This document shows, one piece after another, positions 9,619-32,766 of a stretch of 64,000 nucleotides of DNA; the stretch's first letter is position 1, and every line of letters starts with the position of its first letter. The stretch is from positions 124,001-188,000 of IMG/VR virus record IMGVR_UViG_3300043411_000942, one strand, 5' to 3'. The notes under the pieces were generated by a model that saw nothing but the letters and a program-made list of their open reading frames with translations, searched no databases and had not been told where the DNA came from. The position numbers were made by a program, and so were the translations under genes.

Positions 9619-9691
9619 GTGAGGTATCTAGGCTGGTGCTTAGCCCTTCTTGACAAGAAGGTGTTGGAGGGTTCGATCCCCTCACCTCACA
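9619..9691 (+). tRNA. tRNA-Val(GAC)
   Basis: GTGAGGT/ACCTCAC, CCTTC-TTGACAA-GAAGG. Confidence 0.82.
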
Positions 9692-10518
9692 CCTAGCTTC
9701 TTATCTCTACCGTCAGGTAGATTCGTGACTCCTCGCCTTAGGAGATGTTTACGAACTGCATTATCTGAAACCCCAAGAGACTTTGCCACCGCCATGAAGG
9801 ATGATTTACGTAGCTGCGCCAGTAACTCTTCTATAGATGGCCACACAATTACAGTAGGGCCCATCATCATCCGATGACTGGAGTTGCAATCGTGACAGCA
9901 GGCGCTGTGTGGGGATTTAATTTTGTCGCAGTTTGGGCAAACTAGACCCTTCCACGTAGCTACCTTAGTCTTGACACTACAGGGACCACAATGTCGAGAT
10001 TTCTTACTAACAGCTACTTTCTGACATAACTCACAAAACCTAGGCGGTAGCTTAAGTTTTCTTCCTGCGAAGGTGGGTGTCTGAGAGTGACAGTTGGGAC
10101 ATAGTAACCGTAGGTTGTCAATACGGTTATCGTCGTGAGATCCGTTGATGTGATCAAGTTGCAACGAAAGTGGTGCCCCTAACCATTCGGTTAATCCGCA
10201 TACCTTACACTGGTAGGCTAGAAAGCCTTCCCTCACAAGCTGCACCTTCAAACTTTGAGTGTTAGAGTAGAGGCTATTTTCGACTAGGATGGCCGTGAGT
10301 GGGATTTTTTTACTCCGCTTATGTGTTCCCCCTTTCATGTGCCCCTGACCAGTCCAATGGGTAGTGTCTAGTTGTAACTTCTTAATCTTGACCTTCGCCG
10401 TAGTGTAGTTACCCCCTGTAGCTTTCAACCCAAGTGCTCTGAGTACTTGAGCCATAGTGAGACTGGATCTGACAGCTTCAATGAAGTCTGTTTCTGTATA
10501 TGGTGTGGGTTGGACCAT
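9682..10518 (-). CDS. HNH homing endonuclease with Cys-rich repeats and C-terminal HTH
   Basis: LQLDHINGSHDDNRIDNLRLLCPNCHSQT; likely start MVQPT at 10518. Confidence 0.88.
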   Translation of the reverse strand: MVQPTPYTETDFIEAVRSSLTMAQVLRALGLKATGGNYTTAKVKIKKLQLDTTHWTGQGHMKGGTHKRSKKIPLTAILVENSLYSNTQSLKVQLVREGFLAYQCKVCGLTEWLGAPLSLQLDHINGSHDDNRIDNLRLLCPNCHSQTPTFAGRKLKLPPRFCELCQKVAVSKKSRHCGPCSVKTKVATWKGLVCPNCDKIKSPHSACCHDCNSSHRMMMGPTVIVWPSIEELLAQLRKSSFMAVAKSLGVSDNAVRKHLLRRGVTNLPDGRDKKLGVR

Positions 10519-10573
10519 CTGAACCCTCTCTGTAGTAGACGTACAATGTAGGGGGTATAAGTAGAAAACTGAA

Positions 10574-10655
10574 GCGCGAGTGGTGGAATGGCATACACAG
10601 GACACTCAAAAAGTCCCCCGAAAGGATAAGGGTTCAAGTCCCTTCTCGCGCACCA
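10574..10655 (+). tRNA. tRNA-Leu(CAA)
   Basis: GCGCGAG/CTCGCGC-A-CCA, CT-CAA-AA. Confidence 0.9.
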
Positions 10656-10816
10656 TAGAGAGTACCAATCCTGTCAGGCAGGGGTAATCTCTAGTTCAAC
10701 CTTGAACCTGGATATAGGGGTTGGACCTTAGGTGGGAGGTAGGCAATATCTCCCACCTAAGGCGTTTCTCTCAACTCGACTCGCTTGAAGCGAGTCACTC
10801 ACGAGACATAAATCAG

Positions 10817-12703
10817 ATGAACAAAGAAAATCTAGGCCCAGCAGAGCGCATTCTGCAAACGTTGCTTCAGTACACGGATCATGCTGTCCACAACCGACCA
10901 GGGTACACCGTAAAGGACACCTCTGTTGTCGGAGTGAAGTGGCAACCTGTCACTCACAAGGTAGAGGGTGACGAGAAGGTAGTTTACACTCTCTCGAAGG
11001 TGGGCAAGAAGACTGTCCGTACGAGGTTGGGTGTCCTTCAGCCGGACAATCGAATCACGGGCCCTAGGGGGGCCTTGATTGGGGAGTACCGACCAGCCGG
11101 TCTGTTCCCTGAGGTCGTGACCTGGATGTACCGTCAGGTCACGGAGGTGTGGAAGCTGGATAACGAGTTCGCTGCCCGTTGGGCGAGCTACGCTTTCAAG
11201 CAAGAGCATCGAGACCTGAAGGTCATCCTGGCAGCCCTGATGCTTGTACAGTCCCGTAAGGGAGATCCTGTTCTGGATCAAGGCAAGGTAGCCTTCTACG
11301 ATGAAGACTTCCGAGACGTTGGAGAGGCCATGTTGCTGCTCCATGACAAGGACAACAAGGCTGGGTTGAACCCCAAGCTACTTCTTCGTGTCCAGGAGAT
11401 TCTGACCCTTCCTGGAGTGGTTGCAATCAACCGAGAGCTTGGTTTCTCTCGATCCCTACGTAACCCGGCTCTGGGTCGTTGGCCCAAGGCTGTAACTAAG
11501 TGGCTTCGGTTCCGAGAGGAAAACCCCAAGCTGCTTGCAGGACTCGTTAAGGCTGGATTCAAGTCCACCGTAATGGAGTTGGCACGTAAGGTAGGGTACA
11601 AGCCGGAGTCTTCAAAGTTCTTTGAGGCTCTTCGGTGGAAGCAGGGACAAGCCAAGGACGGTCACCGTTCAATTGCCATTGGGCAAGCGGTAACCGCTGC
11701 GGAATCCTGGAATGGTCTGACTGAAGAGCAAGTCTGTCAAAAGATTGCGTCTACTCGACCTAACTGGAAGCGGATCGTAGGTCTTCTTCCCAAGGAGGTT
11801 GGAGTTACCCGAGCAATCGTGGCTGTAGCGATTGAGTCTGGGTCGTTTAGCGACAAGGACTTGATCATTGCAACCCCGACGCTGGAGGAGCTTGGTCTCC
11901 TGGATGTTCAGGACATTCGAGCCCGCTGGGTTCGAGCCACGAAAGAGGCGGATGACATGCGTGCGGCGAACATTGCCACACGAGTCAAGAGCCAAGCGAC
12001 CAAGGAAGTTCTACAGGATGCTGCGGACACAGCAATCAAGAAGGTTGTAGAGCAGGTCATGAAGGGGATTCGAATCTACTTCATGGTTGACATCTCGGGA
12101 TCGATGGAAGGCGCTATTGAGTCCGCAAAGGGCTACATCGGTAAGTTCCTTCAGGCGTTCCCGAAAGACAAGGTCCATGTGAGCGTGTTCAATACTTCTG
12201 GGCGAGAAGTCCAAATCCCACACGCGTCAGCGGCTGGGGTGGAGAATGCGTTCAAGGGCATTAGGGCAGGAGGCGGTACGGACTATGGGGCTGGCGTTCG
12301 AGCCCTCATGAAGTTCAAGCCTCAGGCTGACGAGGATGTCATCTTCTTCTTCGTGGGAGATGAAGAGGCGAGTGAGTTTTCGACTGCGGTTAGAGATTCT
12401 GGCCTTTCTCCAGTTGCTTTCGGATTTGTAAAGGTTCGAGCAACTACTGGAGCTGGGGCTTGGAGAGCTACACAGTACGAAACTTCGGCAGTACGAGACA
12501 CTGCAACGAACTTGGGAGTTCCTTGCTTCATGGTGGACGCAAATACGTTTGACGACCCCTACGCAATTCCACGTACGATGCGGAATCTCATCTCAGCTAC
12601 CCCTGTTGGTGTAGCTCGTAAGCAGACCGAGACCACGCGAGTGGGTCTTGTGGACCTGATTCTAAAGACCGATATCATGCAGAAGCCGACTTGGGCTTCG
12701 TGA
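10817..12703 (+). CDS. helical (Ro60/TROVE-like) domain plus C-terminal vWA domain protein
   Basis: vWA MIDAS VDISGSM, AGGGTDYG, VGDE; ~410 aa basic helical N-terminus; TROVE assignment is inference; start ATG 10817. Confidence 0.75.
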   Translation: MNKENLGPAERILQTLLQYTDHAVHNRPGYTVKDTSVVGVKWQPVTHKVEGDEKVVYTLSKVGKKTVRTRLGVLQPDNRITGPRGALIGEYRPAGLFPEVVTWMYRQVTEVWKLDNEFAARWASYAFKQEHRDLKVILAALMLVQSRKGDPVLDQGKVAFYDEDFRDVGEAMLLLHDKDNKAGLNPKLLLRVQEILTLPGVVAINRELGFSRSLRNPALGRWPKAVTKWLRFREENPKLLAGLVKAGFKSTVMELARKVGYKPESSKFFEALRWKQGQAKDGHRSIAIGQAVTAAESWNGLTEEQVCQKIASTRPNWKRIVGLLPKEVGVTRAIVAVAIESGSFSDKDLIIATPTLEELGLLDVQDIRARWVRATKEADDMRAANIATRVKSQATKEVLQDAADTAIKKVVEQVMKGIRIYFMVDISGSMEGAIESAKGYIGKFLQAFPKDKVHVSVFNTSGREVQIPHASAAGVENAFKGIRAGGGTDYGAGVRALMKFKPQADEDVIFFFVGDEEASEFSTAVRDSGLSPVAFGFVKVRATTGAGAWRATQYETSAVRDTATNLGVPCFMVDANTFDDPYAIPRTMRNLISATPVGVARKQTETTRVGLVDLILKTDIMQKPTWAS

Positions 12704-12717
12704 AAGAGTAGAGCGCC

Positions 12718-13680
12718 ATGGGGTGGAGAGACTTGCTTCCAGAAAAAGAGGAGACTGTAATCTTCCCTTGGGTTGGAGGTAGGTCTCTTCGCTCCGGCTC
12801 TCGTACTTGGAAAATTCAAGGTGCGCTACCAGACGAGCATGGATGGTATGCGTTTCGGATAGTGGGGCGTAATGCCACTCTAGGTGGACCTAGTGGTCCC
12901 GTAGTTGGGATGCTCGATCCTTACAAGGATGTTGGTTACCTAGTAGGGGACCACTTTGTATCTGACTCAATCCAGGCTCAGAGTACTACTCAGGCGTTGC
13001 GCCAGATGAGCCCAGTGGGGCTAGTTGAGCCAGGACTAGATCGGTTCGCTAGGGTCTCCGTAGGGCGAGCGTTTGAGGGCGGCCCTCTTATCTACATGGG
13101 ACTAGAGTTCCCTTTGGGCCCGGAGGAGCAAGTCCTTCAAATGTTCCTAGACCAAGCTCCAACCGTTCGTGAAGTCAAAGGAGTTACTCCAGCGCTCGAA
13201 GCTGCCTTTCAAGTGGAAACTTGGCAACGTCTGGAAACAGAGAGGTTGCGAGTAGAAGCAAACGAGCGTCGCCGATTGGCGGAGGAGCAACGACGTAAGG
13301 AAGAGCAACGTCAACAGATTTTGAACCAGCTTGGGGACGCAGTTGGTCGCCGTCAAATGGCTCAACTCGACTTTGCAGAAGCTGCAAAAGCCTCCCTTGC
13401 GGTAGGGGGCGCTACTTACCTAGACCATCGTAGAGCCGTCACGAGAGGTGAGATGGTTGTAAGGTTCCGGTACATGGACCGTAGGTTCGAATGTGTGTGC
13501 GACGAGAAGACACTACAGATCATTGACTCTGGAGTGTGCCTTACTGCACACAATGATGATGATGGGTTTGACGAGGGAGTGAAAGGAGACCGTTTCTTTA
13601 CTCTTGAGTCCCTGCCATCCGTGTTGAAGGAAGCTCAGGATCTTGGCCGTCTTGTGGTGTATAGGCACGTAGATGGCTAA
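12718..13680 (+). CDS. conserved protein, possible E2-like C-terminal domain
   Basis: Coiled coil followed by IIDSGVCL...TLESLPSVL, reminiscent of the E2 GxxCL catalytic segment; lies in a Ubl operon. Confidence 0.5.
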   Translation: MGWRDLLPEKEETVIFPWVGGRSLRSGSRTWKIQGALPDEHGWYAFRIVGRNATLGGPSGPVVGMLDPYKDVGYLVGDHFVSDSIQAQSTTQALRQMSPVGLVEPGLDRFARVSVGRAFEGGPLIYMGLEFPLGPEEQVLQMFLDQAPTVREVKGVTPALEAAFQVETWQRLETERLRVEANERRRLAEEQRRKEEQRQQILNQLGDAVGRRQMAQLDFAEAAKASLAVGGATYLDHRRAVTRGEMVVRFRYMDRRFECVCDEKTLQIIDSGVCLTAHNDDDGFDEGVKGDRFFTLESLPSVLKEAQDLGRLVVYRHVDG

Positions 13681-14239
13681 CGAAAAAGACCGCTCAGTTT
13701 GGGTTTTCAGGCTGAGTAACGATCCAGTAGGTGTGCGCCCCATCGAGGATGAAGTGCGCCCCATCGAGGATGAAGTCGCGGACGCACTGCAACGACAGGA
13801 CAAAGCCCTCATGGCTAGCAGAGAAGAAGAGCACGTCTCAGCTGTCCCAATCTATGGGGCTCCACTCTACGTGATGCCCGCCAAGGTACCCGTAGGTACT
13901 GGATTTGCAGACCCAGCTTACGAAGAAGAAGTCAACATAAACGTCTCAGCCGTTTCAGCCTATGGCGGGGCTCCACCTTTAGATGATGATCATGACTACG
14001 AGTTTGACGTCTGCTTGGAAGACTACTCTCAAGCCACCCTTACAAAGGTGGTCCAAGTTGTACGTAGGGTGCTCCCCATGGACCTAGCGAAGGCTGTTAC
14101 TCTAGTAAAGAGCACTCCTGTGGTTTTAGCCTCTAAGGTTAGCATCTCAGATGCTTTGGAGCTTGAGTCAGAGTTCACTAAGGTTGGAGCGCAAGTACGA
14201 GTTGTAAACTCGTACACCAAAGAGGTGGTACGAGCATGA
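13673..14239 (+). CDS. ribosomal protein L7/L12 C-terminal domain protein
   Basis: EFDVCLED...KVVQVVRRVLPMDLAKAVTLVKSTPVVL...VSISDALELESEFTKVGAQV. Confidence 0.78.
   Translation: MANEKDRSVWVFRLSNDPVGVRPIEDEVRPIEDEVADALQRQDKALMASREEEHVSAVPIYGAPLYVMPAKVPVGTGFADPAYEEEVNINVSAVSAYGGAPPLDDDHDYEFDVCLEDYSQATLTKVVQVVRRVLPMDLAKAVTLVKSTPVVLASKVSISDALELESEFTKVGAQVRVVNSYTKEVVRA
13733..13774 (+). repeat. perfect 21-nt tandem duplication (VRPIEDE x2)
   Basis: GTGCGCCCCATCGAGGATGAA twice. Confidence 0.9.
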
Positions 14240-14703
14240 GCATAGAAACAGGAGTGGTGGTAAACCTTCAAGGGGAGCCGATTCACTGGCACCTCCCACC
14301 AGGACGGTCTGCTGGGTACCTACCGGATAGTAGAGACCTTTGGGATGTGTTCTGGGAGAATCGTGACAACCTACTCGGGTTTGCACACAGCCACCCAGGG
14401 GCAGGCTACCCTCACCCTTCTCACGAAGATCTTACAACCTTCTCAGCGGTAGAAGCTGGCTTGGGTCGAAGGTTGCTTTGGTGGGTTATGAGTAAGACCT
14501 CGGTAGTGGTGTATAGCTGGGTCGGTCCTGGTTTGTACGACTACCGAGTGAACTCTGACCGAGAGGCTAAGTATGAGAGTGGGGACAGCTCAAGCCAACA
14601 GGAACTAAGTTGGGTTGCGAGGTTGTACTCTCTATCTTACCTAAACAATGAGGGTAGTCCAGAGATGGACTACATGAACGTAGACCTTGGCGGAGATAGA
14701 TAA
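14236..14703 (+). CDS. JAB/JAMM metallopeptidase
   Basis: N-terminal E, then HSHPGAGYPHPSHED (HxH-x-S-xx-D motif). Confidence 0.9.
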   Translation: MSIETGVVVNLQGEPIHWHLPPGRSAGYLPDSRDLWDVFWENRDNLLGFAHSHPGAGYPHPSHEDLTTFSAVEAGLGRRLLWWVMSKTSVVVYSWVGPGLYDYRVNSDREAKYESGDSSSQQELSWVARLYSLSYLNNEGSPEMDYMNVDLGGDR

Positions 14704-14715
14704 GGGGAATTCAAA

Positions 14716-14973
14716 ATGGAAGCAAATGAAGCACGAGTGAATGTTACTTACGCAGGTGCAAACGGAGACCTGCCCGACCCTGTATCGTTTGATGCAGCGG
14801 ACGGAGACATCAAGCAGTGGGTCACTGAGTCTGTAAGGACCGGGGGAATCCCAGGGATTCCTGCCACGGCAACGGCCAACTTCGCAGACTTTGTGGTGGA
14901 CCGGTTCACGGCGAACGAAGCAAGGCCTTACAATGCAATTTTCTTGAGGCCGAAAACCCCATTTGGAGTCTAG
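14716..14973 (+). CDS. ubiquitin-like beta-grasp protein (Ubl)
   Basis: 85 aa ending IFLRPKTPFG-V; lies between JAB and E1 genes. Confidence 0.72.
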   Translation: MEANEARVNVTYAGANGDLPDPVSFDAADGDIKQWVTESVRTGGIPGIPATATANFADFVVDRFTANEARPYNAIFLRPKTPFGV

Positions 14974-14996
14974 TTCTAGTTGACACTCAAGCGGCT

Positions 14997-15218
14997 TTGG
15001 TGAGGCCATTCTTACCAGAGTGTTTTCTCTATAAGATTCAACATGTTAGCCACATTAAGCCCAACCCTTGGTGGCAGCGCTCCCGAAAGCTAACCCCTGA
15101 AGCTGTTCGGGTTATCCGGGCTAGCGGAGCGTCACTCTCGAAGTTGGCTAAAACCTACTCTGTCTCCCGTAGGGTGGTCCAACTGGTCCGTGCTGGGGAG
15201 ACTTACCAAGACGTGTAA
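14997..15218 (+). CDS. small HTH protein (homing-endonuclease C-terminal type)
   Basis: KLTPEAVRVIRASGASLSKLAKTYSVSRRVVQLVRAGETY, similar to the C-terminus of 59136-60236. Confidence 0.55.
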   Translation: MVRPFLPECFLYKIQHVSHIKPNPWWQRSRKLTPEAVRVIRASGASLSKLAKTYSVSRRVVQLVRAGETYQDV

Positions 15219-15272
15219 AAACTCGTTAAAGGTTCCCGTCCTTGGTACGTAAGGTTAGGTAAGGTAGCCAAC

Positions 15273-15506
15273 ATGAACTTCCAGACCCTTACGACTCGAT
15301 TGAAGACAATCGGGGAGATTGTGGAGCCAGCCAACGGACCTAAGGTAGGGGATTCTTACCTAGACCTTCACACTTCCTCAGAGGGAGTAATCTGGAAGGT
15401 CATGGAGGTTGACTGGGTTCACGACACCGTCAAGCTGAAAGGCTTGAAAGGCCATGTTGAGTGGGCTGGGTACTACTCAGTTCTCAACTTGATGAGAAAA
15501 CTCTGA
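15273..15506 (+). CDS. hypothetical protein
   Basis: 77 aa ORF after a promoter motif; TGATG-coupled to E1. Confidence 0.6.
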   Translation: MNFQTLTTRLKTIGEIVEPANGPKVGDSYLDLHTSSEGVIWKVMEVDWVHDTVKLKGLKGHVEWAGYYSVLNLMRKL

Positions 15507-16081
15507 TGAAAAACATAGTAGTAGTGGGAGTAGGGGCTCTTGGTTCACACCTTGTCCCTCTACTCCGTAACCTGGACGCAACTGTAAAGGTTGTGGACTT
15601 TGACCGAGTAGAGACAAAGAACACGATGTCTCAGTTCCACGCAAAGTCTTCTGTCGGTAAGTCGAAGGTTCAAGCCCTTCAAGCTACCATGCAGTTCTTG
15701 TGGGGCGTAAAGCTGCAAGTCATACCCCACAAGCTTACTACAGACAACCAAGAGCAGCTCCTTGGAGGAGCAGACCTTCTTGTCGACTGCCTAGACAACG
15801 GCCCTTCCAGGAGACTTGTACAGGACTATGCGAAGCGTAAAGGTGTCCCATGCCTACATGGGGCGTTAGCAGCGGATGGTTCGTTTGGTAGGGTAATCTG
15901 GACAGAGTCCTTTACCATCGATGAGGCTCCTGGAGTTGGTACTCCAACCTGTGAGAACGGAGAGCACCTAGCGTTCATCTCCATCGTGGCCTCCTATCTA
16001 GCTCAGGTTACCAGTGCTTTTCTTGCTACTGGTACCAAGTTGGGGTATAGTGTTCATGCAGGTGGTGCGGTTAGGACGTAG
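15506..16081 (+). CDS. ThiF/E1-like Ubl-activating adenylyltransferase
   Basis: GVGALG, VDFDRVETKN, GKSKV, VDCLDN, single Cys in PTCE. Confidence 0.9.
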   Translation: MKNIVVVGVGALGSHLVPLLRNLDATVKVVDFDRVETKNTMSQFHAKSSVGKSKVQALQATMQFLWGVKLQVIPHKLTTDNQEQLLGGADLLVDCLDNGPSRRLVQDYAKRKGVPCLHGALAADGSFGRVIWTESFTIDEAPGVGTPTCENGEHLAFISIVASYLAQVTSAFLATGTKLGYSVHAGGAVRT

Positions 16082-16149
16082 GAAAAATCGCACGCTTAGC
16101 AAAAGAAAATCTTGCCCGCCCTCTACTCCTGGTGTAGAGGTACTTAACA

Positions 16150-16207
16150 GGAAGAGGTGACCTAATCGGTAGGTACCTCAGGCTGGTTCGAATCCACCCT
16201 CTTCCCC
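16150..16207 (+). ncRNA. anticodon-armless tRNA-like RNA
   Basis: GGAAGAGG/CCTCTTCC, D arm ACCT-AATCGGT-AGGT, TTCGAAT loop, no anticodon arm. Confidence 0.6.
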
Positions 16208-16208
16208 T

Positions 16209-16341
16209 GCTTCTGTCTACTACCTGAATCTTACAAGCAATGTTGGTTCGAATCCAACTGCCCCTTCGGGGGTATGGCGGAATGGAAAACGCAATCACCC
16301 GATAAGTGATCAATACCCAGATTCAGGACTCAGTCAGAAGC
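16209..16341 (+). ncRNA. Y RNA (YrlA)-like permuted tRNA mimic #1
   Basis: GCTTCTG/CAGAAGC and CCTGAATCT/AGATTCAGG enclose T arm, UUCG-capped acceptor hairpin, then D arm. Confidence 0.78.
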
Positions 16342-16348
16342 TACTTTC

Positions 16349-16476
16349 GCCGCATATGACTCCAGGTGGGGTCACTCCCGTTTAAAGGAATAAACCGACA
16401 CTCCGCTCTCAATCCTCGCAAGAGGGTTAACTTGAAGTGTCTACAAGAATGGTTGGTTCGAGTCCAACATGCGGCA
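16349..16476 (+). ncRNA. tRNA-like RNA #2 with inserted motif stem
   Basis: GCCGCAT/ATGCGGC acceptor, T arm; GACACT...AGTGTC insert carries the shared internal loop. Confidence 0.7.
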
Positions 16477-16478
16477 CT

Positions 16479-16600
16479 AGAGACGGTTACTACGAGGTGT
16501 TTACAAGCATAGTCCAATGGTAGGACATCAGCCCTGATAGCTGACTGTATAGGTTCAATTCCTATTGCAATCAATCCAACACCTCAACTCAATCGTCTCT
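16479..16600 (+). ncRNA. tRNA-like RNA #3 nested in motif stem
   Basis: AGAGACG/CGTCTCT and GAGGTGTT/AACACCTC enclose D, anticodon-like and T arms. Confidence 0.75.
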
Positions 16601-16705
16601 TATATCTATGTTACCATTCAAGATTACCTCTATCTTGCTCTAGGTCGTGTGGTGCAAAGTTAGGAGCAGTGCAGAAAAACCGTATCGTTGCTACTTAGTT
16701 ACTTA

Positions 16706-16836
16706 GCCGGACATAGAGGGTGGGTCCCCTCATTCGTAATGAAGCACGAAAAGCACCAGCATCTCTTCTCGCCCTCTTTACCGAGGGTTCTCTGAGATGC
16801 TTACAAGAAATCTTGGTTCGAGTCCAAGGTCCGGCG
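16706..16836 (+). ncRNA. tRNA-like RNA #4 with inserted motif stem
   Basis: GCCGGAC/GTCCGGC, T arm CTTGG-TTCGAGT-CCAAG, AGCATCTC/GAGATGCT insert. Confidence 0.7.
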
Positions 16837-16838
16837 CT

Positions 16839-16967
16839 AGAGCGATCACTCTGGGATGTTTACACGCTAAAATTGCTCAACTGGTAGAGCAGCCGCCTCA
16901 TAAGCAGCATGTTGCTGGTTCAAGTCCAGCTTTCAGCATCAAAACAACATCCAATCTCGATCGCTCT
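16839..16967 (+). ncRNA. RNA #5: whole tRNA(CAT) cloverleaf (16866-16938) nested in motif stem
   Basis: AGAGCGATC/GATCGCTCT and GGATGTT/AACATCC flank the cloverleaf. Confidence 0.75.
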
Positions 16968-16975
16968 TACTACTT

Positions 16976-17060
16976 GGAATGGAAACCTATCGGGGATAGG
17001 CTTGGTTTTGAAAACCAAAGGAGCGAGAAATCGCCTGGGGGTCGGGACCTCTTCATTCCT
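16976..17060 (+). tRNA. tRNA-Ser(TGA), 8/4 fold
   Basis: GGAATGGA/TTCATTCC, T stem GGGG/CCTC, long variable arm. Confidence 0.82.
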
Positions 17061-17065
17061 CTCTT

Positions 17066-17148
17066 GCGTGGGTGGCGAAATGGCAGACGCAGTAGATTCA
17101 AAATCTACCACCCTTAGAAGTGTACGGGTTCAAGTCCCGTCCCACGCA
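17066..17148 (+). tRNA. tRNA-Leu(CAA)
   Basis: GTAGA-TTCAAAA-TCTAC. Confidence 0.92.
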
Positions 17149-17161
17149 CCGAGGTGACTTC

Positions 17162-17410
17162 ATGGAGCCTGTAAAGAAGGTACACGGTATCGGGTACGCC
17201 TCTCAACCTGATCATCAATTCCGATGCGACGGTAAATGGGGACAGCCTGCATGGGCTGGAGCTAATCAGAGCATGGGGTCGGATGGTCGTATCCGAGATG
17301 GCTCAGGGGAGCCTCTCACTCCAGAGCGTGTGTATCTATCAGATGAAGACGACCGACTCTTCTCGTTTGATGAGTCCCTCGTCACATGTGAAGCTTGTCT
17401 CGGTAAGTAG
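17162..17410 (+). CDS. hypothetical protein
   Basis: GAGGT RBS, ATG 17162, C-terminal VTCEAC. Confidence 0.6.
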   Translation: MEPVKKVHGIGYASQPDHQFRCDGKWGQPAWAGANQSMGSDGRIRDGSGEPLTPERVYLSDEDDRLFSFDESLVTCEACLGK

Positions 17411-17433
17411 GGTAGGGTTTGATTGTGTGTAAT

Positions 17434-17514
17434 GCGAACGTGGTGGAATGGCAGACACGCCAGACTAAGGATCTGGTGCCGTAAGGTGTGAGAGTTCAAG
17501 TCTCTCCGTTCGCA
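17434..17514 (+). tRNA. tRNA-Leu(AAG)
   Basis: GCGAACG/CGTTCGC-A, CCAGA-CTAAGGA-TCTGG, long variable arm. Confidence 0.92.
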
Positions 17515-17526
17515 CTAGGTGTTTCA

Positions 17527-17712
17527 ATGAAGCTGATAGCTGCTATGGTTTTGAGTGACGAAGGAAAACTGCTTCCGTATACGTGCCAGAGTTCCATGTC
17601 TGCTTGCGAAGAGGAAGCAGCTGTAACTCTTCCTTGGTACAGGATGAAAGCACTCGGGGCTAAGGTGGTTCAAGTCGAAATCCGCACCTTAGATTCGCCA
17701 GAAACCGAATAA
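17527..17712 (+). CDS. hypothetical protein
   Basis: AGGT RBS, ATG 17527. Confidence 0.55.
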   Translation: MKLIAAMVLSDEGKLLPYTCQSSMSACEEEAAVTLPWYRMKALGAKVVQVEIRTLDSPETE

Positions 17713-17882: not shown

Positions 17883-17967
17883 GGAAGGTGAATCGATCAG
17901 GGATCGGCGCGACTTGGAAAGTCGTTGGGGCTCGAAAGGGTCTGGAGGTCGGGACTTCCTCCTTCCG
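17883..17967 (+). tRNA. tRNA-Ser(GGA), 8/4 fold
   Basis: GCGAC-TTGGAAA-GTCGT, G73. Confidence 0.82.
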
Positions 17968-18595
17968 CTTTAGGTTTTACGCGCCTATCAGGCCTTCCTC
18001 GGCCTTTGTTCAGTGCCCCATAGGTCGGAGTCAGTGAGTGGCAATTAGGGCATAGGAGGCGTAAGTTCTGTTCCGAACTATTGCTCCAATCCCCGTCTAT
18101 GTGGTCAACATGTAGAGGCACCTTTTTGGTGGTTGGGTTTACCCGCGACCAGTTACACTCAGAGCACTTTGAGCTATACTTCTCGAAAAGGTAATGGCGT
18201 ACTCGATACGAGACTGAGGCCCCCTTTATACCCCCTGAGACACTACCGTTCCTCCAGAGCACAATAAATTCTCTGTACTTACCCTCCCAATGGGCGGGTA
18301 CACACTTTTTGGAGCAGTATTGCCGGTCCTCTTTGAAGTGGGTCCTACAAGTAGGGCACTCCTTCTCTTTAGCTCTACCTTTCCCTTGGTCCTTGACTCC
18401 GCCCTTAGGCTTTAGTTGTCGACATACCTCGCAGTATGTCCAGTAAGACCGAATGGGTGCGCTACATACCTTGCACTTGTTCTTGAGCTTTATTTTCGGG
18501 CTTATTGAGTTGTTGTGGCTGTTGGCACAGCTTCTAGAGCAGAACTTGAGGTTACTCGAAAGTGAACCACATACGGGACATACTATTTGACTCAT
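17897..18595 (-). CDS. HNH homing endonuclease
   Basis: Cys-rich N-terminus; LHVDHIDGDWSNSSEQNLRLLCPNCHSLT; 3' end antisense to tRNA-Ser(GGA). Confidence 0.88.
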   Translation of the reverse strand: MSQIVCPVCGSLSSNLKFCSRSCANSHNNSISPKIKLKNKCKVCSAPIRSYWTYCEVCRQLKPKGGVKDQGKGRAKEKECPTCRTHFKEDRQYCSKKCVPAHWEGKYREFIVLWRNGSVSGGIKGASVSYRVRHYLFEKYSSKCSECNWSRVNPTTKKVPLHVDHIDGDWSNSSEQNLRLLCPNCHSLTPTYGALNKGRGRPDRRVKPKAEGGSPDLQTLSSPNDFPSRADP

Positions 18596-20138: not shown

Positions 20139-20162
20139 CTGGTGTATTCAACACATGGAGAG

Positions 20163-20918
20163 ATGAAAATGAAGCTGAATCAGATTATCGCGGTTGAGAA
20201 GGGTGTTCGTGGTCGAGGAGTGGAGCGACTCACTGGAGTGTACAAGACCCTCCAGCGACAGGACGTTTTTACTGGTCTTCAACGTCGGTATACTCCGATG
20301 AACGATGACGTGGCAACTCCTCAAGGGGAGATGCTCCCTCCGGAAACCAAGAACATCCAGGAGGATGTTCACCTGCTTCTTCAGCAAGTGGCTGAGGCGT
20401 CGAGTGAGATCATCGACGTTACCTGGCAGCGGGACTTGACGAATTGTGTCGCAAAGGCGGATGTGGTTGTGGATGGAAACGTCCTGATCAAGGGAGCCCC
20501 TGTTCCGTTTCTCCTGTCCCTTGAGAAGTACCTCAATGACATTCACAGCGAGGTGAAGAAGATTCCCACGCTGGATGCTAGTGAGAAGTGGACGTTTGAC
20601 TCGCAGCAAGGCTGCTGGGTGTCTGAGGTTACGGAGACGACCCGTACCAAGAAGGTTACGAACGTCCTGGTCCTTCATCCTGCCACGAAGGAGCATCCTG
20701 CTCAAGTGAAGGAAGTCTCGGATGATGTTCGGGTTGGCACTTGGCGTACAACGAAGCAGGCGAAGTCTGTTCCGGTTACCGTGAAGGCTGCCTACCTCTC
20801 CCGAGTGGAGACCCTCCAGAAGGCTGTAAAGTTTGCTCGTGAAGAAGCAAACCAGACGAACGTCGTGGAGGACAATGGGCCAGGAAAGGCGCTTTTCGAG
20901 TACCTCTTCCCCACCTGA
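20163..20918 (+). CDS. conserved uncharacterised helical protein (DUF7873-like from memory)
   Basis: MKLNQIIAVEKG...LPPE...KADVVVDG...VPFLLSLEK...ATKEHPAQV...AVKFAREEAN...YLF. Confidence 0.75.
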   Translation: MKMKLNQIIAVEKGVRGRGVERLTGVYKTLQRQDVFTGLQRRYTPMNDDVATPQGEMLPPETKNIQEDVHLLLQQVAEASSEIIDVTWQRDLTNCVAKADVVVDGNVLIKGAPVPFLLSLEKYLNDIHSEVKKIPTLDASEKWTFDSQQGCWVSEVTETTRTKKVTNVLVLHPATKEHPAQVKEVSDDVRVGTWRTTKQAKSVPVTVKAAYLSRVETLQKAVKFAREEANQTNVVEDNGPGKALFEYLFPT

Positions 20919-20919
20919 A

Positions 20920-21388
20920 AGTTTTGCTTGACCTAGGTTTCGGCCTGAGTTAAGCTGAAAAGTGAGCACTAAGCTCAAGTTGAAGCTGAAGATAACTGGT
21001 TGAGTTTTTCGCCGCAAGGTTTGTAGGTTCGAGTCCTACCCCTCCAACCAAGATTCCGAGTACCCACAGGGTGGTTCGGGGTTTTGGTTGGAGGGTGGTG
21101 AAACGGTAAACACAAACGACTCAATCAACACGAGAATTAAGCTATCGCTCAAATCTCGTAAGACATGCAGAGACTCCAATCGAACGGGACCTAAGTAATT
21201 CTCATCATGCGAGTTCAAATCTCGCCCGAGCCGCTACTCACGTAAAGTGAGTCTTTCAATCAAGGCTCGGTGGACTAACGGTAAGTCGTTGAGGCGTCAA
21301 GATAACTAGGGACCTTAAAAGTCTGTGGAGACTCAAAATAAGCATAACAACGTAGGGGAGCCAATCTAGGCTAGTGTTGGTTCCCCGC
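20920..21388 (+). ncRNA. large structured RNA with two circularly permuted tRNA modules
   Basis: Modules 20998-21126 and 21200-21294 run T arm, closed acceptor, D arm; AAGCTG-type hexamer runs; terminal hairpin GGGGAGCCAA/TTGGTTCCCC. Confidence 0.75.
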
Positions 21389-21392
21389 TTAT

Positions 21393-21464
<72 letters not shown>

Positions 21465-21466
21465 CA

Positions 21467-22084
21467 ATGAAGTCCAGGTACAGCTTAGCAGGAAAGTTAG
21501 GGGCAGTAGAGTCTGCCAAAACAGCTTCGCTTCGGAAGCAGCAGCGTACTCAAGCCTACGACTTAGAGCCTAAGTTCTGTAAGTACTGTAAACTTCCTAT
21601 TGCTTACGAGCAAAGACGAAATGACTTCTGCGGTCATTCCTGTGCAGCTAGTGTCACTAACAAGGGGGTGAAGAGGTCCAAGCTAAAGCCACCACCTTGT
21701 AGGTTATGCTGTGCCACCTTGAAAAGGAACGCAGCAAAGTTCTGCTCTCACACTTGTCAACAAAAATTTACATACGATGCGTTCGTTATTGCTTGGAAGG
21801 CTGGGGTTGAGGTTGGTGGATCTTGGTCGCATGTCTCTAGGTATGTTCGCAAGTGGTTGATTGAGGAGTTCGGGGAAAAGTGCTCTAAGTGTGGTTGGAG
21901 TGAGCGACATACCGTAACTCAAAGAGTTCCCGTTCAGGTGGACCACATCGACGGAGACCCTAACAATCACAGACCGGAGAATCTTCGGCTGCTTTGCCCT
22001 AACTGCCACAGTCTTACAGCGACCTATGGAGGGTTGAATCGAGGTAGAGGTCGAAAAGAGAGGTACCTCAGCGATTCAGGTTAA
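21467..22084 (+). CDS. HNH homing endonuclease
   Basis: VQVDHIDGDPNNHRPENLRLLCPNCHSLT; ATG immediately after tRNA-Thr. Confidence 0.88.
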   Translation: MKSRYSLAGKLGAVESAKTASLRKQQRTQAYDLEPKFCKYCKLPIAYEQRRNDFCGHSCAASVTNKGVKRSKLKPPPCRLCCATLKRNAAKFCSHTCQQKFTYDAFVIAWKAGVEVGGSWSHVSRYVRKWLIEEFGEKCSKCGWSERHTVTQRVPVQVDHIDGDPNNHRPENLRLLCPNCHSLTATYGGLNRGRGRKERYLSDSG

Positions 22085-28389: not shown

Positions 28390-28744
28390 GGGGTTGAAAT
28401 AGTTTCGACGTTGGAGAGAAGTAGTGCTTGCATGTAGGCGGTCCTTGACCCGCCTTGACCAATCAAGGAACGTTAATTGCGAACGATAACGCATACGCGA
28501 CTCCCGCTCTCGCAGCGGCTTGAGTAGCTGTCCTCCAGGGAGATCGTCCTGGTACCTGAACGGGGGCATCAATCACTAGGGCTGGTCGAAGAGCTGGGCT
28601 AACCGAGCACGAGATGAGATAAACAGGGTAGATAGGTCCTAGCCGAATCGAGGAACTCAGTTGACGGGGATACGTCAACCAATCATGTGGAAGAAGGCAC
28701 TTACGTATTTCTGGCGGACCCGAGTGCGATCCTCGGCAACTCCA
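28390..28744 (+). ncRNA. ssrA: tmRNA
   Basis: 5' GGGGTTGAAATAGTTTCGAC, 3' GGACCCGAG-TGCGATC-CTCGG-CAACTCC-A, G3:U70; tag 28479-28523 ANDNAYATPALAAA*. Confidence 0.93.
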
Positions 28745-28888
28745 CAGTAATCCCACCCGAAACGGTGGGGTTGAATTTGTAGCAGGCGGTTAAATTGGTT
28801 CGATACTTTTACGTAGAAGAGAGGGACTAGAAGTTCTAGCCCTCGAAAGAGGGTACGGACATGAGGAAGAGGCAAAGGTAGGTGTAAC

Positions 28889-30745: not shown

Positions 30746-32765
<2,020 letters not shown>

Positions 32766-32766
<1 letters not shown>

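What the first reader, a model, noticed from the sequence alone, without database searches (positions are those of the whole stretch)
10764..16967. Phage ubiquitin-like conjugation operon coupled to a Ro/vWA protein and an array of tRNA-mimic RNAs
Seen: a co-oriented run of genes, namely helical+vWA protein (MIDAS DISGS), a protein with an E2-like SGVCL segment, an L7/L12-CTD protein, JAB peptidase, an 85-aa Ubl ending PFG-V, and ThiF/E1. It is followed immediately by six tRNA-like non-coding RNAs. Established: Ro60/Rsr is TROVE+vWA and binds tRNA-mimicking Y RNAs; JAB trims Ubl tails to expose Gly and E1 adenylates them; known bacterial E1-E2-JAB systems (CBASS Cap2/3, Bil, Bub) are host-encoded. 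Inference: a phage RNP in which tRNA decoys held by a Ro-like scaffold recruit tRNA-binding proteins (e.g. host anticodon nucleases or translation factors) for Ubl tagging, or trigger conjugation when cleaved.
Basis: partly seen in the sequence, partly recalled or inferred. Interest (0 to 1): 0.93.

Follow-up and report, generated by a model that had tools for sequence, protein, structure and literature searches.

The report
Huge-phage Ro-like, ubiquitin-like, tRNA-mimic module
A widespread group of giant phages carries, inside its tRNA gene array, a conserved five-gene set (a distant Ro60-like RNA-binding protein, an unknown cysteine protein, and a small ubiquitin-like protein with its trimming and activating enzymes). 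Next to it lies a previously undescribed family of tRNA-shaped RNAs that comes in two circularly permuted forms.

Summary
The window is part of a 233-kb fragment of an uncultured huge phage.

**Conserved core.** Five genes keep the same order in about 55 related huge-phage loci:
- a vWA/MIDAS protein
- a 320-aa protein with an invariant cysteine
- a JAMM peptidase
- an 85-aa protein with an invariant RPKTPFG tail
- a minimal ThiF-type E1

The L7/L12 gene is a lineage-specific insertion. Other insertions are homing endonucleases.

**Ro-like protein.** Three independent shape and feature searches put TROVE/Ro60 proteins on top, but the Pfam TROVE model finds nothing. I read it as a distant Ro60-like protein.

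**"E2".** The label fails every fold and profile test. The protein has two OB-like barrels, a long helix and a small cysteine domain.

**RNAs.** These are the main result. They form a new family of ~130-150-nt tRNA-like RNAs with a giant conserved arm (invariant CUCG and ACAAG). One form has tRNA topology. The other is circularly permuted and resembles a Y RNA. Both show strong covariation, and copies usually start within ~150 nt of the E1 stop or lie just upstream of the vWA gene.

**Best reading.** A phage Ro-like RNP with its own tRNA-mimic Y RNAs, coupled to Ubl activation. The conjugation step, the targets and RNA binding are all inferred.

The parts
10817..12703 (+). Ro60-like protein: N-terminal beta domain, helical TROVE-like domain, C-terminal vWA domain with a complete MIDAS. 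The ORF opens at TTG 10721.
12718..13680 (+).
13673..14239 (+). L7/L12 C-terminal-domain protein. A lineage-specific insertion, not part of the core.
   Evidence: Pfam Ribosomal_L12, E = 1.9e-9. NCBIfam L12, E = 6e-11, below cut-off. Found only in the near-identical relative L004/L019.
14236..14703 (+). JAB/JAMM metallopeptidase.
   Evidence: Prok-JAB, E = 2e-5. E4, H51, H53, S62 and D65 invariant in 50 orthologues. Present in 57 of 63 loci.
14716..14973 (+). 85-aa ubiquitin-like candidate with the tail RPKTPFG-V.
   Evidence: Tail invariant in 57 orthologues and followed by 0-60 variable residues; 8 end exactly at Gly. Weak language-model lead to Prok_Ub, score 0.55. No Pfam or PDB sequence hit. 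Fold not tested.
14997..15218 (+). 73-aa HTH-like ORF, probably a remnant of a homing endonuclease. Not core.
   Evidence: Only weak HTH hits. Matches in 4 of 63 loci: 90% identity in the near-identical relative, 29-34% in three others. Recurrent inserts at this position elsewhere are LAGLIDADG-plus-HTH and HNH endonucleases.
15273..15506 (+). 77-aa ORF of unknown function. Not core.
   Evidence: Found only in the near-identical relative. No family hit.
15506..16081 (+). Minimal single-domain E1-like adenylating enzyme of the ThiF/MoeB/UbaA type. The ORF opens at GTG 15461.
   Evidence: Pfam ThiF, E = 2.1e-24. PADLOC CBASS E1-E2 models, E = 3e-14. NCBIfam ThiF, UbaA and MoeB all far below cut-off. 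The GxGxxG motif, D31, R34, K54, D94-C95-x-D97 and C149 are invariant or nearly so in 33 orthologues.
16150..16212 (+). Short tRNA-like element with acceptor, D-arm and T-arm but no anticodon arm. Weak evidence.
   Evidence: Read from the sequence. The fold is not better than shuffles, z = -0.86.
16208..16341 (+). Type P RNA, the permuted member of the family. The 5'/3' ends form a terminal stem with a CUC(A) internal loop. Then come ACAAGC, the T-arm, an acceptor helix closed by UUCG, a D-arm and an anticodon-like arm.
   Evidence: Model R2, 92.5 bits, E = 1.9e-18. Fold z = -2.68. Family covariation.
16349..16476 (+). Type S RNA, tRNA topology: 7-bp acceptor, D-like arm, anticodon-like arm, a giant variable arm with CUC and a GCAA-capped hairpin, then ACAAG and the T-arm.
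   Evidence: Model R1, 80.3 bits, E = 4.5e-19. Fold z = -3.86.
16500..16575 (+). tRNA-like element preceded by UUUACAAGC, with D, anticodon and T arms but only a 3-bp acceptor.
   Evidence: Rfam tRNA 46 bits, model positions 5-66 only. ARAGORN does not call it. Fold not significant.
16706..16836 (+). Type S RNA, second copy.
   Evidence: Model R1, 84.4 bits, E = 3.6e-20. Fold z = -5.58.
16866..16938 (+). Ordinary tRNA-Met(CAU), directly preceded by the UUUACAC leader.
   Evidence: ARAGORN. Rfam tRNA 58 bits. Leader sequence.

Best explanation
This is a conserved huge-phage module that builds a Ro60-like ribonucleoprotein around phage-encoded tRNA mimics and couples it to a small ubiquitin-like modifier.

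**Shown**
- Five genes travel together in a fixed order.
- Beside them lie 1-8 copies of a dedicated tRNA-like RNA family.
- The RNA keeps the tRNA elbow (GG in the D-loop, GGUUCGAnUCC in the T-loop) and a 6-7-bp acceptor helix.
- The RNA also carries a long extra helix with an invariant internal loop (CUCG on one strand, ACAAG at the junction to the T-arm).
- The gene exists in two circular permutations. Type S has tRNA-like ends. Type P has a terminal stem and a capped acceptor, as in bacterial YrlA Y RNAs.

**Inferred**
- Host RNase P, RNase Z and the CCA-adding enzyme mature the type S units. Because type P units often abut type S units, this processing would also release them.
- The TROVE-like ring or its vWA domain binds the conserved long helix, as Ro60 binds the Y RNA stem.
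- The OB-fold protein binds the tRNA-like body.
- JAB trims the residues after Gly84 of the Ubl.
- The E1 adenylates that Gly and probably forms a thioester on its invariant Cys149.
- The Ubl is then passed on, possibly through invariant Cys274 of the OB protein. The recipient is either a component of the RNP or a protein captured by the tRNA mimic, such as host tRNA-directed nucleases or other tRNA-binding factors.
- The purpose is most likely protection or control of the phage's large tRNA pool during infection.
For: - **Gene order.** Conserved in 53-58 of 63 loci, with only homing endonucleases and lineage-specific genes inserted.
- **Ro60-like architecture.** TROVE/Ro60 structures are the top Foldseek PDB hits, with 544-587 aligned columns and E = 3e-8 to 2e-5, ahead of vWA-only hits. 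A TROVE-domain and two DUF2828 viral proteins are among the full-length hits in BFVD. TROVE clusters lead the feature search for residues 1-412, which exclude the vWA domain. The MIDAS is complete.
- **RNA family, type S.** 62-sequence seed; 18 of 20 pairs show compensatory changes. On 119 hits, 89.9% of cells are paired, with covariation 0.818 against 0.217 for shuffles and at most 0.20 for slid controls.
- **RNA family, type P.** 49 hits, 95.1% paired, covariation 0.686 against 0.191. All 6 pairs of the capped acceptor covary.
- **Linkage.** 86 of 119 type S hits lie downstream of E1, and the first copy is usually 43-140 nt after the stop. Another 30 lie upstream of the vWA gene, and none lies inside the module. 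In five whole records of 233-619 kb the hits lie at or within ~13 kb of the module. Four of five further contigs that hold the RNA also hold a vWA homologue at 42-67% identity; the fifth is a fragment rated 14% complete.
- **Processing.** 17 of 49 type P units start within 6 nt of the end of a type S unit.
- **Ubl tail, JAMM residues and E1 residues** are conserved.
- **Precedent.** Ro60 genes sit next to tRNA-like Y RNAs in bacteria and phages, and M. smegmatis YrlA has a 7-bp acceptor that RNase P cuts (PMC4201824). A phage Ro60 structure has been solved (PMC12135203).
Against: - No physical or expression evidence. Contigs from RNA libraries cover the region evenly and cannot be told apart from DNA carry-over.
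- The Pfam TROVE model gives nothing, even at E <= 10. TM-scores to Ro60 are only about 0.2, and VIA-align shows only the vWA domain.
- No E2 or E3 was found. The complex prediction for E1 + Ubl + Cys protein gave no answer.
- The beta-grasp fold of the Ubl is unverified.
- Linkage could partly reflect conserved synteny within one phage clade. In two lineages the RNA cluster lies about 15 kb from the module.
- The RNAs lack the YrlA GNCGAA motif, and no Rfam Y RNA model matches them.
Confidence: 0.5

Rival explanations
1. Sulfur-relay reading. The small protein is a ThiS/MoaD/TtuB/Urm1-type sulfur carrier. The E1 adenylates it and it is converted to a thiocarboxylate. JAB removes the tail or a covalent adduct. 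The sulfur is then used to thiolate phage tRNAs or the tRNA-like RNAs, with the Cys protein as the RNA-binding sulfur acceptor. No protein is tagged.
For: - The E1 is closest to ThiF, SAMP-activating UbaA and MoeB.
- No E2 fold is present.
- The module lies inside a tRNA array.
- From established knowledge: TtuB/TtuC in Thermus, and SAMP2/UbaA and Urm1/Uba4, serve tRNA thiolation. JAB partners occur with the CysO and QbsE carriers.
Against: - The tail ends in a single Gly (PFG), not the Gly-Gly typical of sulfur carriers.
- The E1 has no rhodanese domain; it is 191 aa.
- No TtuA/NcsA-type PP-loop enzyme (PF01171) is found in any of five genomes, four of them at least 92% complete.
- JAB is kept even where the Ubl already ends at Gly, in 8 loci. 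That suits deconjugation as well as trimming.
Confidence: 0.15
2. Neighbours without a shared function. The RNAs are unusual phage tRNAs or decoys that act alone, for example as bait or substitutes against host anticodon nucleases. The protein module does something unrelated. They are adjacent only because both sit in the conserved early tRNA region of one phage clade.
For: - All loci come from one related clade, and the tRNA array surrounds the module in most of them.
- In two lineages the RNAs lie about 15 kb from the vWA gene.
- The RNAs keep tRNA-like acceptor, D, anticodon and T arms with varied anticodon-like triplets.
- Their 3' trailers resemble those of ordinary tRNAs in this phage.
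Against: - The RNA cluster moved between two positions, after E1 or before the vWA gene, and still abuts the module in most lineages.
- It is confined to that neighbourhood in genomes of 412-619 kb.
- A Ro60-like protein next to tRNA-like RNAs repeats the known rsr/yrlA arrangement (PMC4201824).
- In type P the acceptor is capped, and only 31 of 110 members show a 7-nt loop with U at position 2. The RNAs are therefore not ordinary decoders.
Confidence: 0.2
3. Virion-assembly reading. The JAB, Ubl and vWA genes act in particle assembly. Precedents are lambda-type tail proteins with JAB and ubiquitin-like domains, and the MoxR-vWA chaperones of some jumbo phages and archaeal viruses.
For: - The JAB protein hits PHROG 5556, labelled 'tail protein', E = 6.5e-6.
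- vWA co-chaperones are described in jumbo phages (PMC7824862).
Against: - The module sits in the tRNA array, far from recognisable structural genes.
- No MoxR ATPase is adjacent.
- The N-terminal part of the vWA protein points to TROVE, not to a chaperone adaptor.
- The presence of an E1 is not explained by this reading.
Confidence: 0.05

Closest known systems
Ro60 (Rsr) with YrlA-type Y RNAs of bacteria and phages (PMC4201824; phage Ro60 structure PMC12135203)
   Same: - A helical TROVE-like domain followed by a vWA/MIDAS domain.
- The protein gene lies next to one or several ~100-150-nt RNAs that mimic tRNA, with a conserved T-arm and D-arm.
- Type P has the Y RNA layout: a terminal stem made by the 5' and 3' ends plus a capped acceptor-like stem of 6-7 bp.
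- RtcB ligase is present elsewhere in all four near-complete relatives.
   Different: - The Pfam TROVE model does not recognise the protein, which also has an extra N-terminal beta domain.
- The long conserved helix leaves from the variable-arm position, and an anticodon-like arm is kept. In YrlA the terminal stem replaces the anticodon stem.
- The conserved motifs are CUCG and ACAAG rather than GNCGAA.
- A second, tRNA-topology form exists.
- The genes are coupled to Ubl, JAB and E1, which has not been reported for any Ro60 locus.
Bil (BilABCD) and related bacterial ubiquitination-like defence operons (CBASS Cap2/Cap3, Bub) (PMC11601596, PMC10557695)
   Same: - A small modifier with a C-terminal Gly that needs exposure.
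- A JAB/JAMM peptidase.
- An E1-type adenylating enzyme; PADLOC Cap2 models hit it at E = 3e-14.
- All are encoded together.
   Different: - This module is phage-encoded rather than a host defence system.
- No UBC-fold E2 is present.
- The E1 is a single 191-aa adenylation domain, not IAD-AAD-CYS and not an E1-E2 fusion.
- The partners are a Ro-like protein and RNAs.
E2-less Ubl systems that double as sulfur carriers: archaeal SAMP/UbaA/HvJAMM1, Thermus TtuB/TtuC, eukaryotic Urm1/Uba4 (own knowledge; NCBIfam UbaA hit)
   Same: - A minimal ThiF-type E1, a small modifier and a JAMM peptidase, with no E2 or E3.
- A functional link to tRNA.
   Different: - The tail is PFG, not GG.
- No rhodanese domain, and no NcsA/TtuA-type thiolase.
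- The Ro-like protein, the Cys protein and the RNAs are additions.
vWA-MoxR 'FtsH ternary' conflict systems with a full Ubl-conjugation set (PMC7159879)
   Same: A vWA protein is encoded with JAB, E1 and a Ubl in one prokaryotic gene cluster.
   Different: - Those systems are bacterial, and they include MoxR, FtsH, a RING E3, a Ubl-E2 fusion and a caspase-like effector.
- None of these is present here.
- They have no TROVE-like domain and no RNAs.
Circularly permuted tRNA-type genes: permuted tRNA genes of the red alga Cyanidioschyzon and two-piece tmRNA genes of alpha-proteobacteria (own knowledge)
   Same: The 3' half (T-arm plus the 3' acceptor strand, often followed by ACC/ACCA) is encoded upstream of the 5' half (5' acceptor strand plus D-arm).
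   Different: - Here both permutations coexist side by side in the same arrays.
- The break lies in the apical loop of a giant variable arm.
- The RNAs do not look like decoding tRNAs.

Membership tests
Ro60/Rsr | TROVE domain recognised by the family profile (Pfam PF05731) | tested here: not met
   No TROVE hit at E <= 1 for the protein. None at E <= 10 in the six-frame search of the phage record, while the control genomes Deinococcus and Bacteroides ring. A profile of 28 orthologues against PDB hits only vWA proteins.
Ro60/Rsr | Helical TROVE-type fold in front of the vWA domain | tested here: inconclusive
   Foldseek top hits are TROVE/Ro60 (9kop 3.3e-8, 1yvr 1.1e-6, 9l5y 3.8e-6) with 544-587 aligned columns, but TM is about 0.2. 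A TROVE-domain protein (rank 3) and DUF2828 proteins (ranks 11, 36) are among the full-length hits in the viral library; the top two hits are unnamed. Language-model features of residues 1-412 score 0.85 to TROVE clusters, which is lead level only. VIA-align shows only the vWA domain. The domain was not folded alone.
Ro60/Rsr | C-terminal vWA domain with MIDAS | tested here: met
Ro60/Rsr | Gene lies next to genes for tRNA-like Y RNAs | tested here: met
   Type S and type P RNAs abut the module in 45 of 59 loci.
Ro60/Rsr | Binds Y RNA and misfolded RNA | not testable with these tools
   Needs RIP/CLIP or in vitro binding.
YrlA-type bacterial Y RNA | Terminal stem from the 5'/3' ends plus a tRNA-like domain ordered T-arm, capped acceptor-like stem, D-arm | tested here: met
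   Type P folds and alignment. Covariation includes 6 of 6 pairs of the capped acceptor. This applies to type P only.
YrlA-type bacterial Y RNA | GNCGAAN0-1G motif on the 5' strand, with the terminal stem in place of the anticodon stem | tested here: not met
   The alignments show invariant CUCG and ACAAG instead, and an anticodon-like arm is kept. No Rfam family other than tRNA types matches 16000-17600 at E <= 1.
Canonical tRNA | Recognised by tRNA models (Rfam RF00005 gathering score, ARAGORN) | tested here: not met
   No call at 16208-16476 or 16706-16836. Ordinary tRNAs score 21 bits or less with the family model R1, against 80-100 bits for members.
Canonical tRNA | 7-nt anticodon loop with U33 and a short or class-II variable arm | tested here: not met
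   By MFE, 52 of 110 members have a 7-nt loop, and 31 of those have U at position 2. Both type S copies in the window have 8-nt loops. The variable region is about 65 nt with invariant motifs.
Bil / CBASS-type ubiquitination-like operons | UBC-fold E2 with a catalytic Cys | tested here: not met
Bil / CBASS-type ubiquitination-like operons | Multi-domain E1 (IAD-AAD-CYS) or an E1-E2 fusion | tested here: not met
   The orthologues are 189-219 aa with a single adenylation domain.
Bil / CBASS-type ubiquitination-like operons | JAB/JAMM peptidase with an intact active site | tested here: met
   E4, H51, H53, S62 and D65 invariant in 50 orthologues.
Ubiquitin-like modifiers | Conserved C-terminal Gly exposed by removal of a variable extension | tested here: met
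   RPKTPFG is followed by 0-60 residues in 57 orthologues; G84 is invariant.
Ubiquitin-like modifiers | Beta-grasp fold | not tested
There is only a weak feature lead to Prok_Ub (0.55), and no Pfam or PDB sequence hit. The conservation pattern fits beta-beta-alpha-beta-beta, but that is inference.
SAMP/TtuB/Urm1-type sulfur carriers | Gly-Gly C-terminus and a partner PP-loop thiolase or rhodanese | tested here: not met
   The tail is PFG. PF01171 is absent from 5 of 5 genomes. The E1 has no extra domain. Host enzymes cannot be excluded.

The most novel reading that the evidence does not exclude
The tRNA-like RNAs are not just bait or scaffold. They are the carriers or targets of the modifier. 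The E1 activates the Ubl's C-terminal Gly as an acyl-adenylate, exactly as an aminoacyl-tRNA synthetase activates an amino acid. The Ubl is then esterified to the 3' CCA end of the mimic RNA, which stands in for the missing E2. From there it is delivered to a target, or it marks the RNA itself, while the Ro-like ring and the OB protein hold the RNA. This would be a protein-to-RNA ubiquitin-like conjugation system in a virus.
Probability: 0.07. Interest if true: 0.95.

Novelty: new variant of a known kind. Interest (0 to 1): 0.82.

Why it matters
- **Ubl chemistry in phages.** If the reading holds, ubiquitin-like chemistry is used by phages as well as by bacterial anti-phage defence. It would be wired to a Ro60-type RNP, a link otherwise known only loosely from the human Ro60/Ro52 autoantigen pair.
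- **A testable RNA family.** The work defines a new, abundant and easily modelled RNA family: 168 hits in about 1 Mb of loci. Its two circular permutations show directly which parts matter, namely the tRNA elbow, the acceptor helix and the long helix with the CUCG/ACAAG loop.
- **The open Y RNA question.** That gives a direct handle on why bacterial and phage Y RNAs mimic tRNA.
- **Huge-phage tRNA arrays.** It also gives a concrete lead on why huge phages carry large tRNA arrays and how they protect them.
- **Annotation gap.** The vWA protein alone has at least 120 full-length 90%-identity clusters on contigs up to 659 kb. Near-identical DNA occurs in freshwater, groundwater and wastewater samples. 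The only GenBank phage record that holds it calls it hypothetical.

Tried and rejected
1. **E2 identity of the 320-aa protein.** Tested with Pfam on 47 orthologues, PADLOC, Foldseek PDB and AFDB, VIA-wide, a VIA second look, the ESM atlas and language-model features. None gave a UBC hit. The weak PADLOC RmrT match (E = 1.6e-4, 54 residues) was not followed further.
2. **Complex prediction of E1 + Ubl(1-84) + Cys protein.** ipSAE was 0.00, reported as 'no answer'. It is evidence neither way.
3. **Transcription evidence.** Four RNA-library runs hold contigs at 95-99% identity across both the genes and the RNAs, with even depth. No ends were visible and DNA carry-over cannot be excluded.
4. **L12-CTD protein as a core part.** Rejected: it is absent from 61 of 63 loci.
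5. **'UACAAG' as a general tRNA leader or promoter in this phage.** Rejected: among the 46 tRNAs only the cluster at 16231-16860 has it.
6. **Genes inserted inside the module as extra components.** They are HNH and LAGLIDADG homing endonucleases. One lineage has an exoribonuclease and a deaminase.
7. **Neighbouring ORFs in the window.** No RNA-repair genes are nearby; they are HNH endonucleases, DUF7873, a chaperonin and a DNA methylase.
8. **Sequence profile of the Ubl against PDB and Pfam.** Nothing found.
9. **Loose DNA pattern scan of IMG/VR for the RNA.** Most of the 80 listed loci (114 matching stretches) were ordinary tRNAs. Only loci confirmed by the covariance model were used.
10. **'Dimeric tRNA' artefact as the explanation for type P.** Rejected: the 5' acceptor strand pairs with the upstream 3' strand and not the downstream one. 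All six pairs covary.

Full report
**Context.** The window is bases 124001-188000 of a 232,937-base IMG/VR virus record that CheckV rates 49% complete, so the phage is huge. Positions 3.7-28.7 kb hold 45 tRNA genes and a tmRNA, all on the + strand. The finding lies in the middle of this array. Near-identical DNA occurs in freshwater, groundwater and wastewater metagenomes. The only GenBank phage record with a homologue of the vWA protein is Virus Rctr197k, where it is annotated as hypothetical and again follows a tRNA array.

**The genes.**
- a vWA protein with a DISGS MIDAS
- a 320-aa protein with the SGVCL segment
- an L7/L12 C-terminal-domain protein
- a Prok-JAB peptidase
- an 85-aa protein ending PFG-V
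- a ThiF-family protein

Homologues of the vWA protein are very numerous. The best 120 clusters are 62-95% identical over 95% of the length and sit on contigs of up to 659 kb. In 63 IMG/VR loci fetched with the family profile, tblastn finds the genes always in the order vWA, Cys protein, JAB, Ubl, E1. The counts are 58, 57, 57 and 53 loci, and the gaps are at contig ends. The L12 gene and the two small ORFs before E1 occur only in the near-identical relative. Genes inserted between core genes elsewhere are HNH and LAGLIDADG homing endonucleases. The core is therefore five genes, and its conservation excludes chance.

**The vWA protein.**
- *Model.* The AlphaFold model (pLDDT 78.5) has a small beta domain (23-92), a helical region (98-410) and a vWA domain (418-595).
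- *MIDAS.* Its residues are invariant.
- *Negative results.* Pfam TROVE does not match, either in the protein or in a six-frame search of the record at E <= 10. A 28-sequence profile hits only vWA proteins in PDB.
- *Positive results.* Foldseek's best PDB hits are a TROVE-domain crystal structure, Xenopus Ro60 and the Ro60 of Thermus phage phiLo. They align over 544-587 columns, ahead of the vWA-only hits, but TM is only about 0.2. In the viral library, a TROVE-domain protein ranks third and DUF2828 proteins also appear among the full-length hits; the top two are unnamed. The language-model feature search for residues 1-412 alone returns TROVE clusters first (score 0.85, a lead-level value). 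VIA-align sees only the vWA domain.
- *Conclusion.* I take this as convergent but not conclusive support for a very divergent Ro60-like protein, probability about 0.7.

**Ubl, JAB and E1.**
- *Ubl.* All 57 orthologues carry RPKTPFG followed by 0 to about 60 variable residues, and eight end exactly at the Gly. This is the classic signature of a modifier whose Gly must be exposed. A single Gly after Phe recalls Atg8 and Ufm1 rather than the Gly-Gly of sulfur carriers (own knowledge).
- *JAB.* It keeps Glu4, His51, His53, Ser62 and Asp65 in all 50 orthologues.
- *E1.* It is a single adenylation domain of about 190 aa. It has GxGxxG, the DCxDN Mg-ATP motif, and an invariant Cys149 located 55 residues after that motif. 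By my recollection this is the position of ThiF Cys184 and MoeB Cys187. Its nearest curated families are ThiF, UbaA and MoeB, all far below their cut-offs.
- *Ubl fold.* It was not tested. Only a weak Prok_Ub lead exists.

**The RNAs, type S.** Between E1 and tRNA-Met the sequence holds repeated T-arm motifs preceded by UACAAG. The same pattern recurs just after E1 in many related loci. Extending from the T-arm to a complementary 7-nt strand upstream defined 62 units of 123-146 nt. Their architecture, in order, is:
- a 7-bp acceptor
- a D-like arm with GG in its loop (98 of 110 members)
- an anticodon-like arm
- sometimes a small extra hairpin
- a giant variable arm, made of a basal stem, an internal loop with invariant CUCG, and a GC-rich hairpin capped by GNRA or UUCG
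- invariant ACAAG
- the T-arm GGUUCGAnUCC and the acceptor 3' strand

RNAalifold finds compensatory changes in 18 of 20 pairs.

A covariance model (R1) gives the following:
- In the window it finds only 16349-16476 (80.3 bits), 16706-16836 (84.4 bits) and a partial match at 16190-16258. Ordinary tRNAs score 21 bits or less.
- In 59 loci it finds 119 hits. On that alignment 89.9% of cells pair and the covariation score is 0.818, against 0.217 for shuffles and at most 0.20 for slid partners.

**The RNAs, type P.** The partial match turned out to be a circular permutation. In at least 23 places, ACAAGC and the T-arm are followed by the acceptor 3' strand. Then comes a short loop that often begins ACC or ACCA, the complementary 5' strand, a canonical D-arm and an anticodon-like arm. 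The ends of the unit pair to form a long terminal stem whose 3' strand carries CACUCG. Type P is therefore type S opened at the apical loop of the variable arm and closed at the acceptor.

- *Not an artefact.* The 5' acceptor strand pairs with the upstream 3' strand and not the downstream one, so this is not a tandem-tRNA artefact.
- *Model R2* finds 49 hits, including the window copy at 16208-16341 (92.5 bits). On these, 95.1% of cells pair, covariation is 0.686 against 0.191, and all six pairs of the capped acceptor covary.
- *Arrangement.* Seventeen of the 49 type P units begin within 6 nt of the end of a type S unit. Several are followed by a GC hairpin and a U run.
- *Likeness to Y RNAs.* The layout is that of bacterial YrlA Y RNAs, including the 7-bp acceptor that RNase P cuts in M. 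smegmatis (PMC4201824). There are three differences: the terminal stem leaves from the variable-arm position, an anticodon-like arm is kept, and the GNCGAA motif is absent. No Rfam Y RNA family matches.

**Linkage of RNAs and module.**
- Of the 119 type S hits, 86 lie downstream of E1, and the first copy is typically 43-140 nt after the stop. Thirty lie upstream of the vWA gene, mostly 190-800 nt away. Three lie after the vWA gene in a locus where E1 was not found. None lies inside the module.
- Type P shows the same pattern.
- Forty-five of 59 loci hold at least one unit. Most of those without one have a short flank.
- In whole records of 412-619 kb, the hits lie at or within ~13 kb of the module.
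- A loose pattern scan of IMG/VR, filtered with R1, found four new contigs. Two of the three large ones also encode a vWA homologue, at 42-48% identity; the third is a fragment rated 14% complete. Two contigs already known were also searched, and there the RNA cluster lies about 15 kb from the module.
- The RNA cluster has therefore moved between the two ends of the module and yet stays beside it in most lineages. This argues for selection on linkage, though all the data come from one broad phage clade.

**Mechanism.** The best-supported reading is a phage Ro60-like RNP with dedicated tRNA-mimic Y RNAs, coupled to a minimal Ubl system.
- *Shown:* the conservation, the catalytic residues, the RNA structures and the linkage.
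- *Inferred:* maturation by RNase P, RNase Z and CCA addition; binding of the long helix by the Ro-like protein and of the tRNA-like body by the OB protein; trimming by JAB; adenylation and thioester formation by the E1; and transfer of the Ubl, perhaps through Cys274, to an RNP component or to a protein captured by the mimic.
- *Precedents for a vWA link:* a MIDAS domain binding a ubiquitin-like domain through an acidic residue is known from Rea1 with Rsa4 and Ytm1 (own knowledge), and the Ubl here has an invariant Glu38. Bacterial vWA-MoxR systems with Ubl conjugation also exist (PMC7159879).
- *Rivals:*
  - A sulfur relay for tRNA thiolation. It is weakened by the PFG tail, the lack of a rhodanese domain, and the absence of PF01171 enzymes in five genomes.
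  - Mere neighbourhood, with no shared function.
  - A role in virion assembly.
- *RNA repair:* RtcB ligase is present in all four near-complete relatives but lies far from the module.
- *Expression:* the data were uninformative.

**Novelty.** Full-text searches found Ro60/Y RNA work in bacteria and phages, a note that some jumbo phages encode TROVE proteins, and the Bil, Bub and CBASS literature. They found nothing that couples a Ro-like protein with Ubl, JAB and E1, and no description of this RNA family. Each component belongs to a known kind. What appears to be new is the combination, the phage setting inside a tRNA array, and the two-topology RNA family.

Noticed in passing
window 20997-21127: Another strongly structured RNA lies 5 kb downstream of the module (MFE -75 kcal/mol, z = -6.1). 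It has a T-arm preceded by GCAAG, followed by a very long capped acceptor-like hairpin, and enclosed by a terminal stem. It is a weak hit of the permuted model R2 (44 bits) and may be a divergent third form of the family.
   Followed up: partly
window 16476-16506 and 16836-16865: After each type S unit, a ~30-nt stretch resembles the 5' part of a type P unit (stem strand, then UUUACAAGC or UUUACACGC). It then runs straight into a tRNA-like element or into tRNA-Met. These look like recombinant or degenerate units. The role of the recurring YUACA(A/C)GC motif is unexplained; it could be a processing site or a protein-binding site.
   Followed up: partly
window 16602-16699: In contigs of related strains from three runs, this 96-nt spacer is replaced by 157 other letters, or the contig diverges here into a sequence that starts like a tRNA. 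The RNA array therefore varies between strains.
   Followed up: no
window 13068-13147: ARAGORN calls a tRNA-Ser(AGA) inside the coding sequence of the conserved 320-aa protein, and again in the near-identical relative. Rfam does not support it, so it is probably a false positive.
   Followed up: partly
window 16976-17059: A weak selenocysteine-tRNA-like match (32 bits; gathering score 47) lies between tRNA-Met and tRNA-Leu. It has a long acceptor-type stem. Its status is unclear.
   Followed up: no
window 28390-28747: The phage encodes a tmRNA with tag peptide ANDNAYATPALAAA at the end of the tRNA array.
   Followed up: no
window 9682-10605(-), 17897-18595(-), 21374-22084(+), 28889-29449(+): Four HNH homing-endonuclease genes are scattered through the tRNA array. 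In relatives, HNH and LAGLIDADG genes also split the module.
   Followed up: partly
window 13673-14239: The L7/L12-CTD protein has an N-terminal part with a direct VRPIEDE repeat and no ribosome-anchoring N-terminal domain. It is a free factor-binding domain inserted in the module in this lineage only. It may bind translational GTPases.
   Followed up: no
L023, L024, L030 (between module genes): One lineage carries an Rv2179c-like 3'-5' exoribonuclease and a cytidine/dCMP-type deaminase inside the module. These are RNA-related genes that might be accessory parts.
   Followed up: no
window 31129-32766 and 20142-20918: The phage encodes a Cpn60/GroEL-type chaperonin and a DUF7873 protein (E = 5.7e-85) just beyond the tRNA array.
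   Followed up: no
Ubl orthologues in L023, L024, L046, L052: Some Ubl genes carry long C-terminal extensions after the Gly, with Cys-rich, zinc-ribbon-like motifs. These extra cargo domains would be released by JAB.
   Followed up: no
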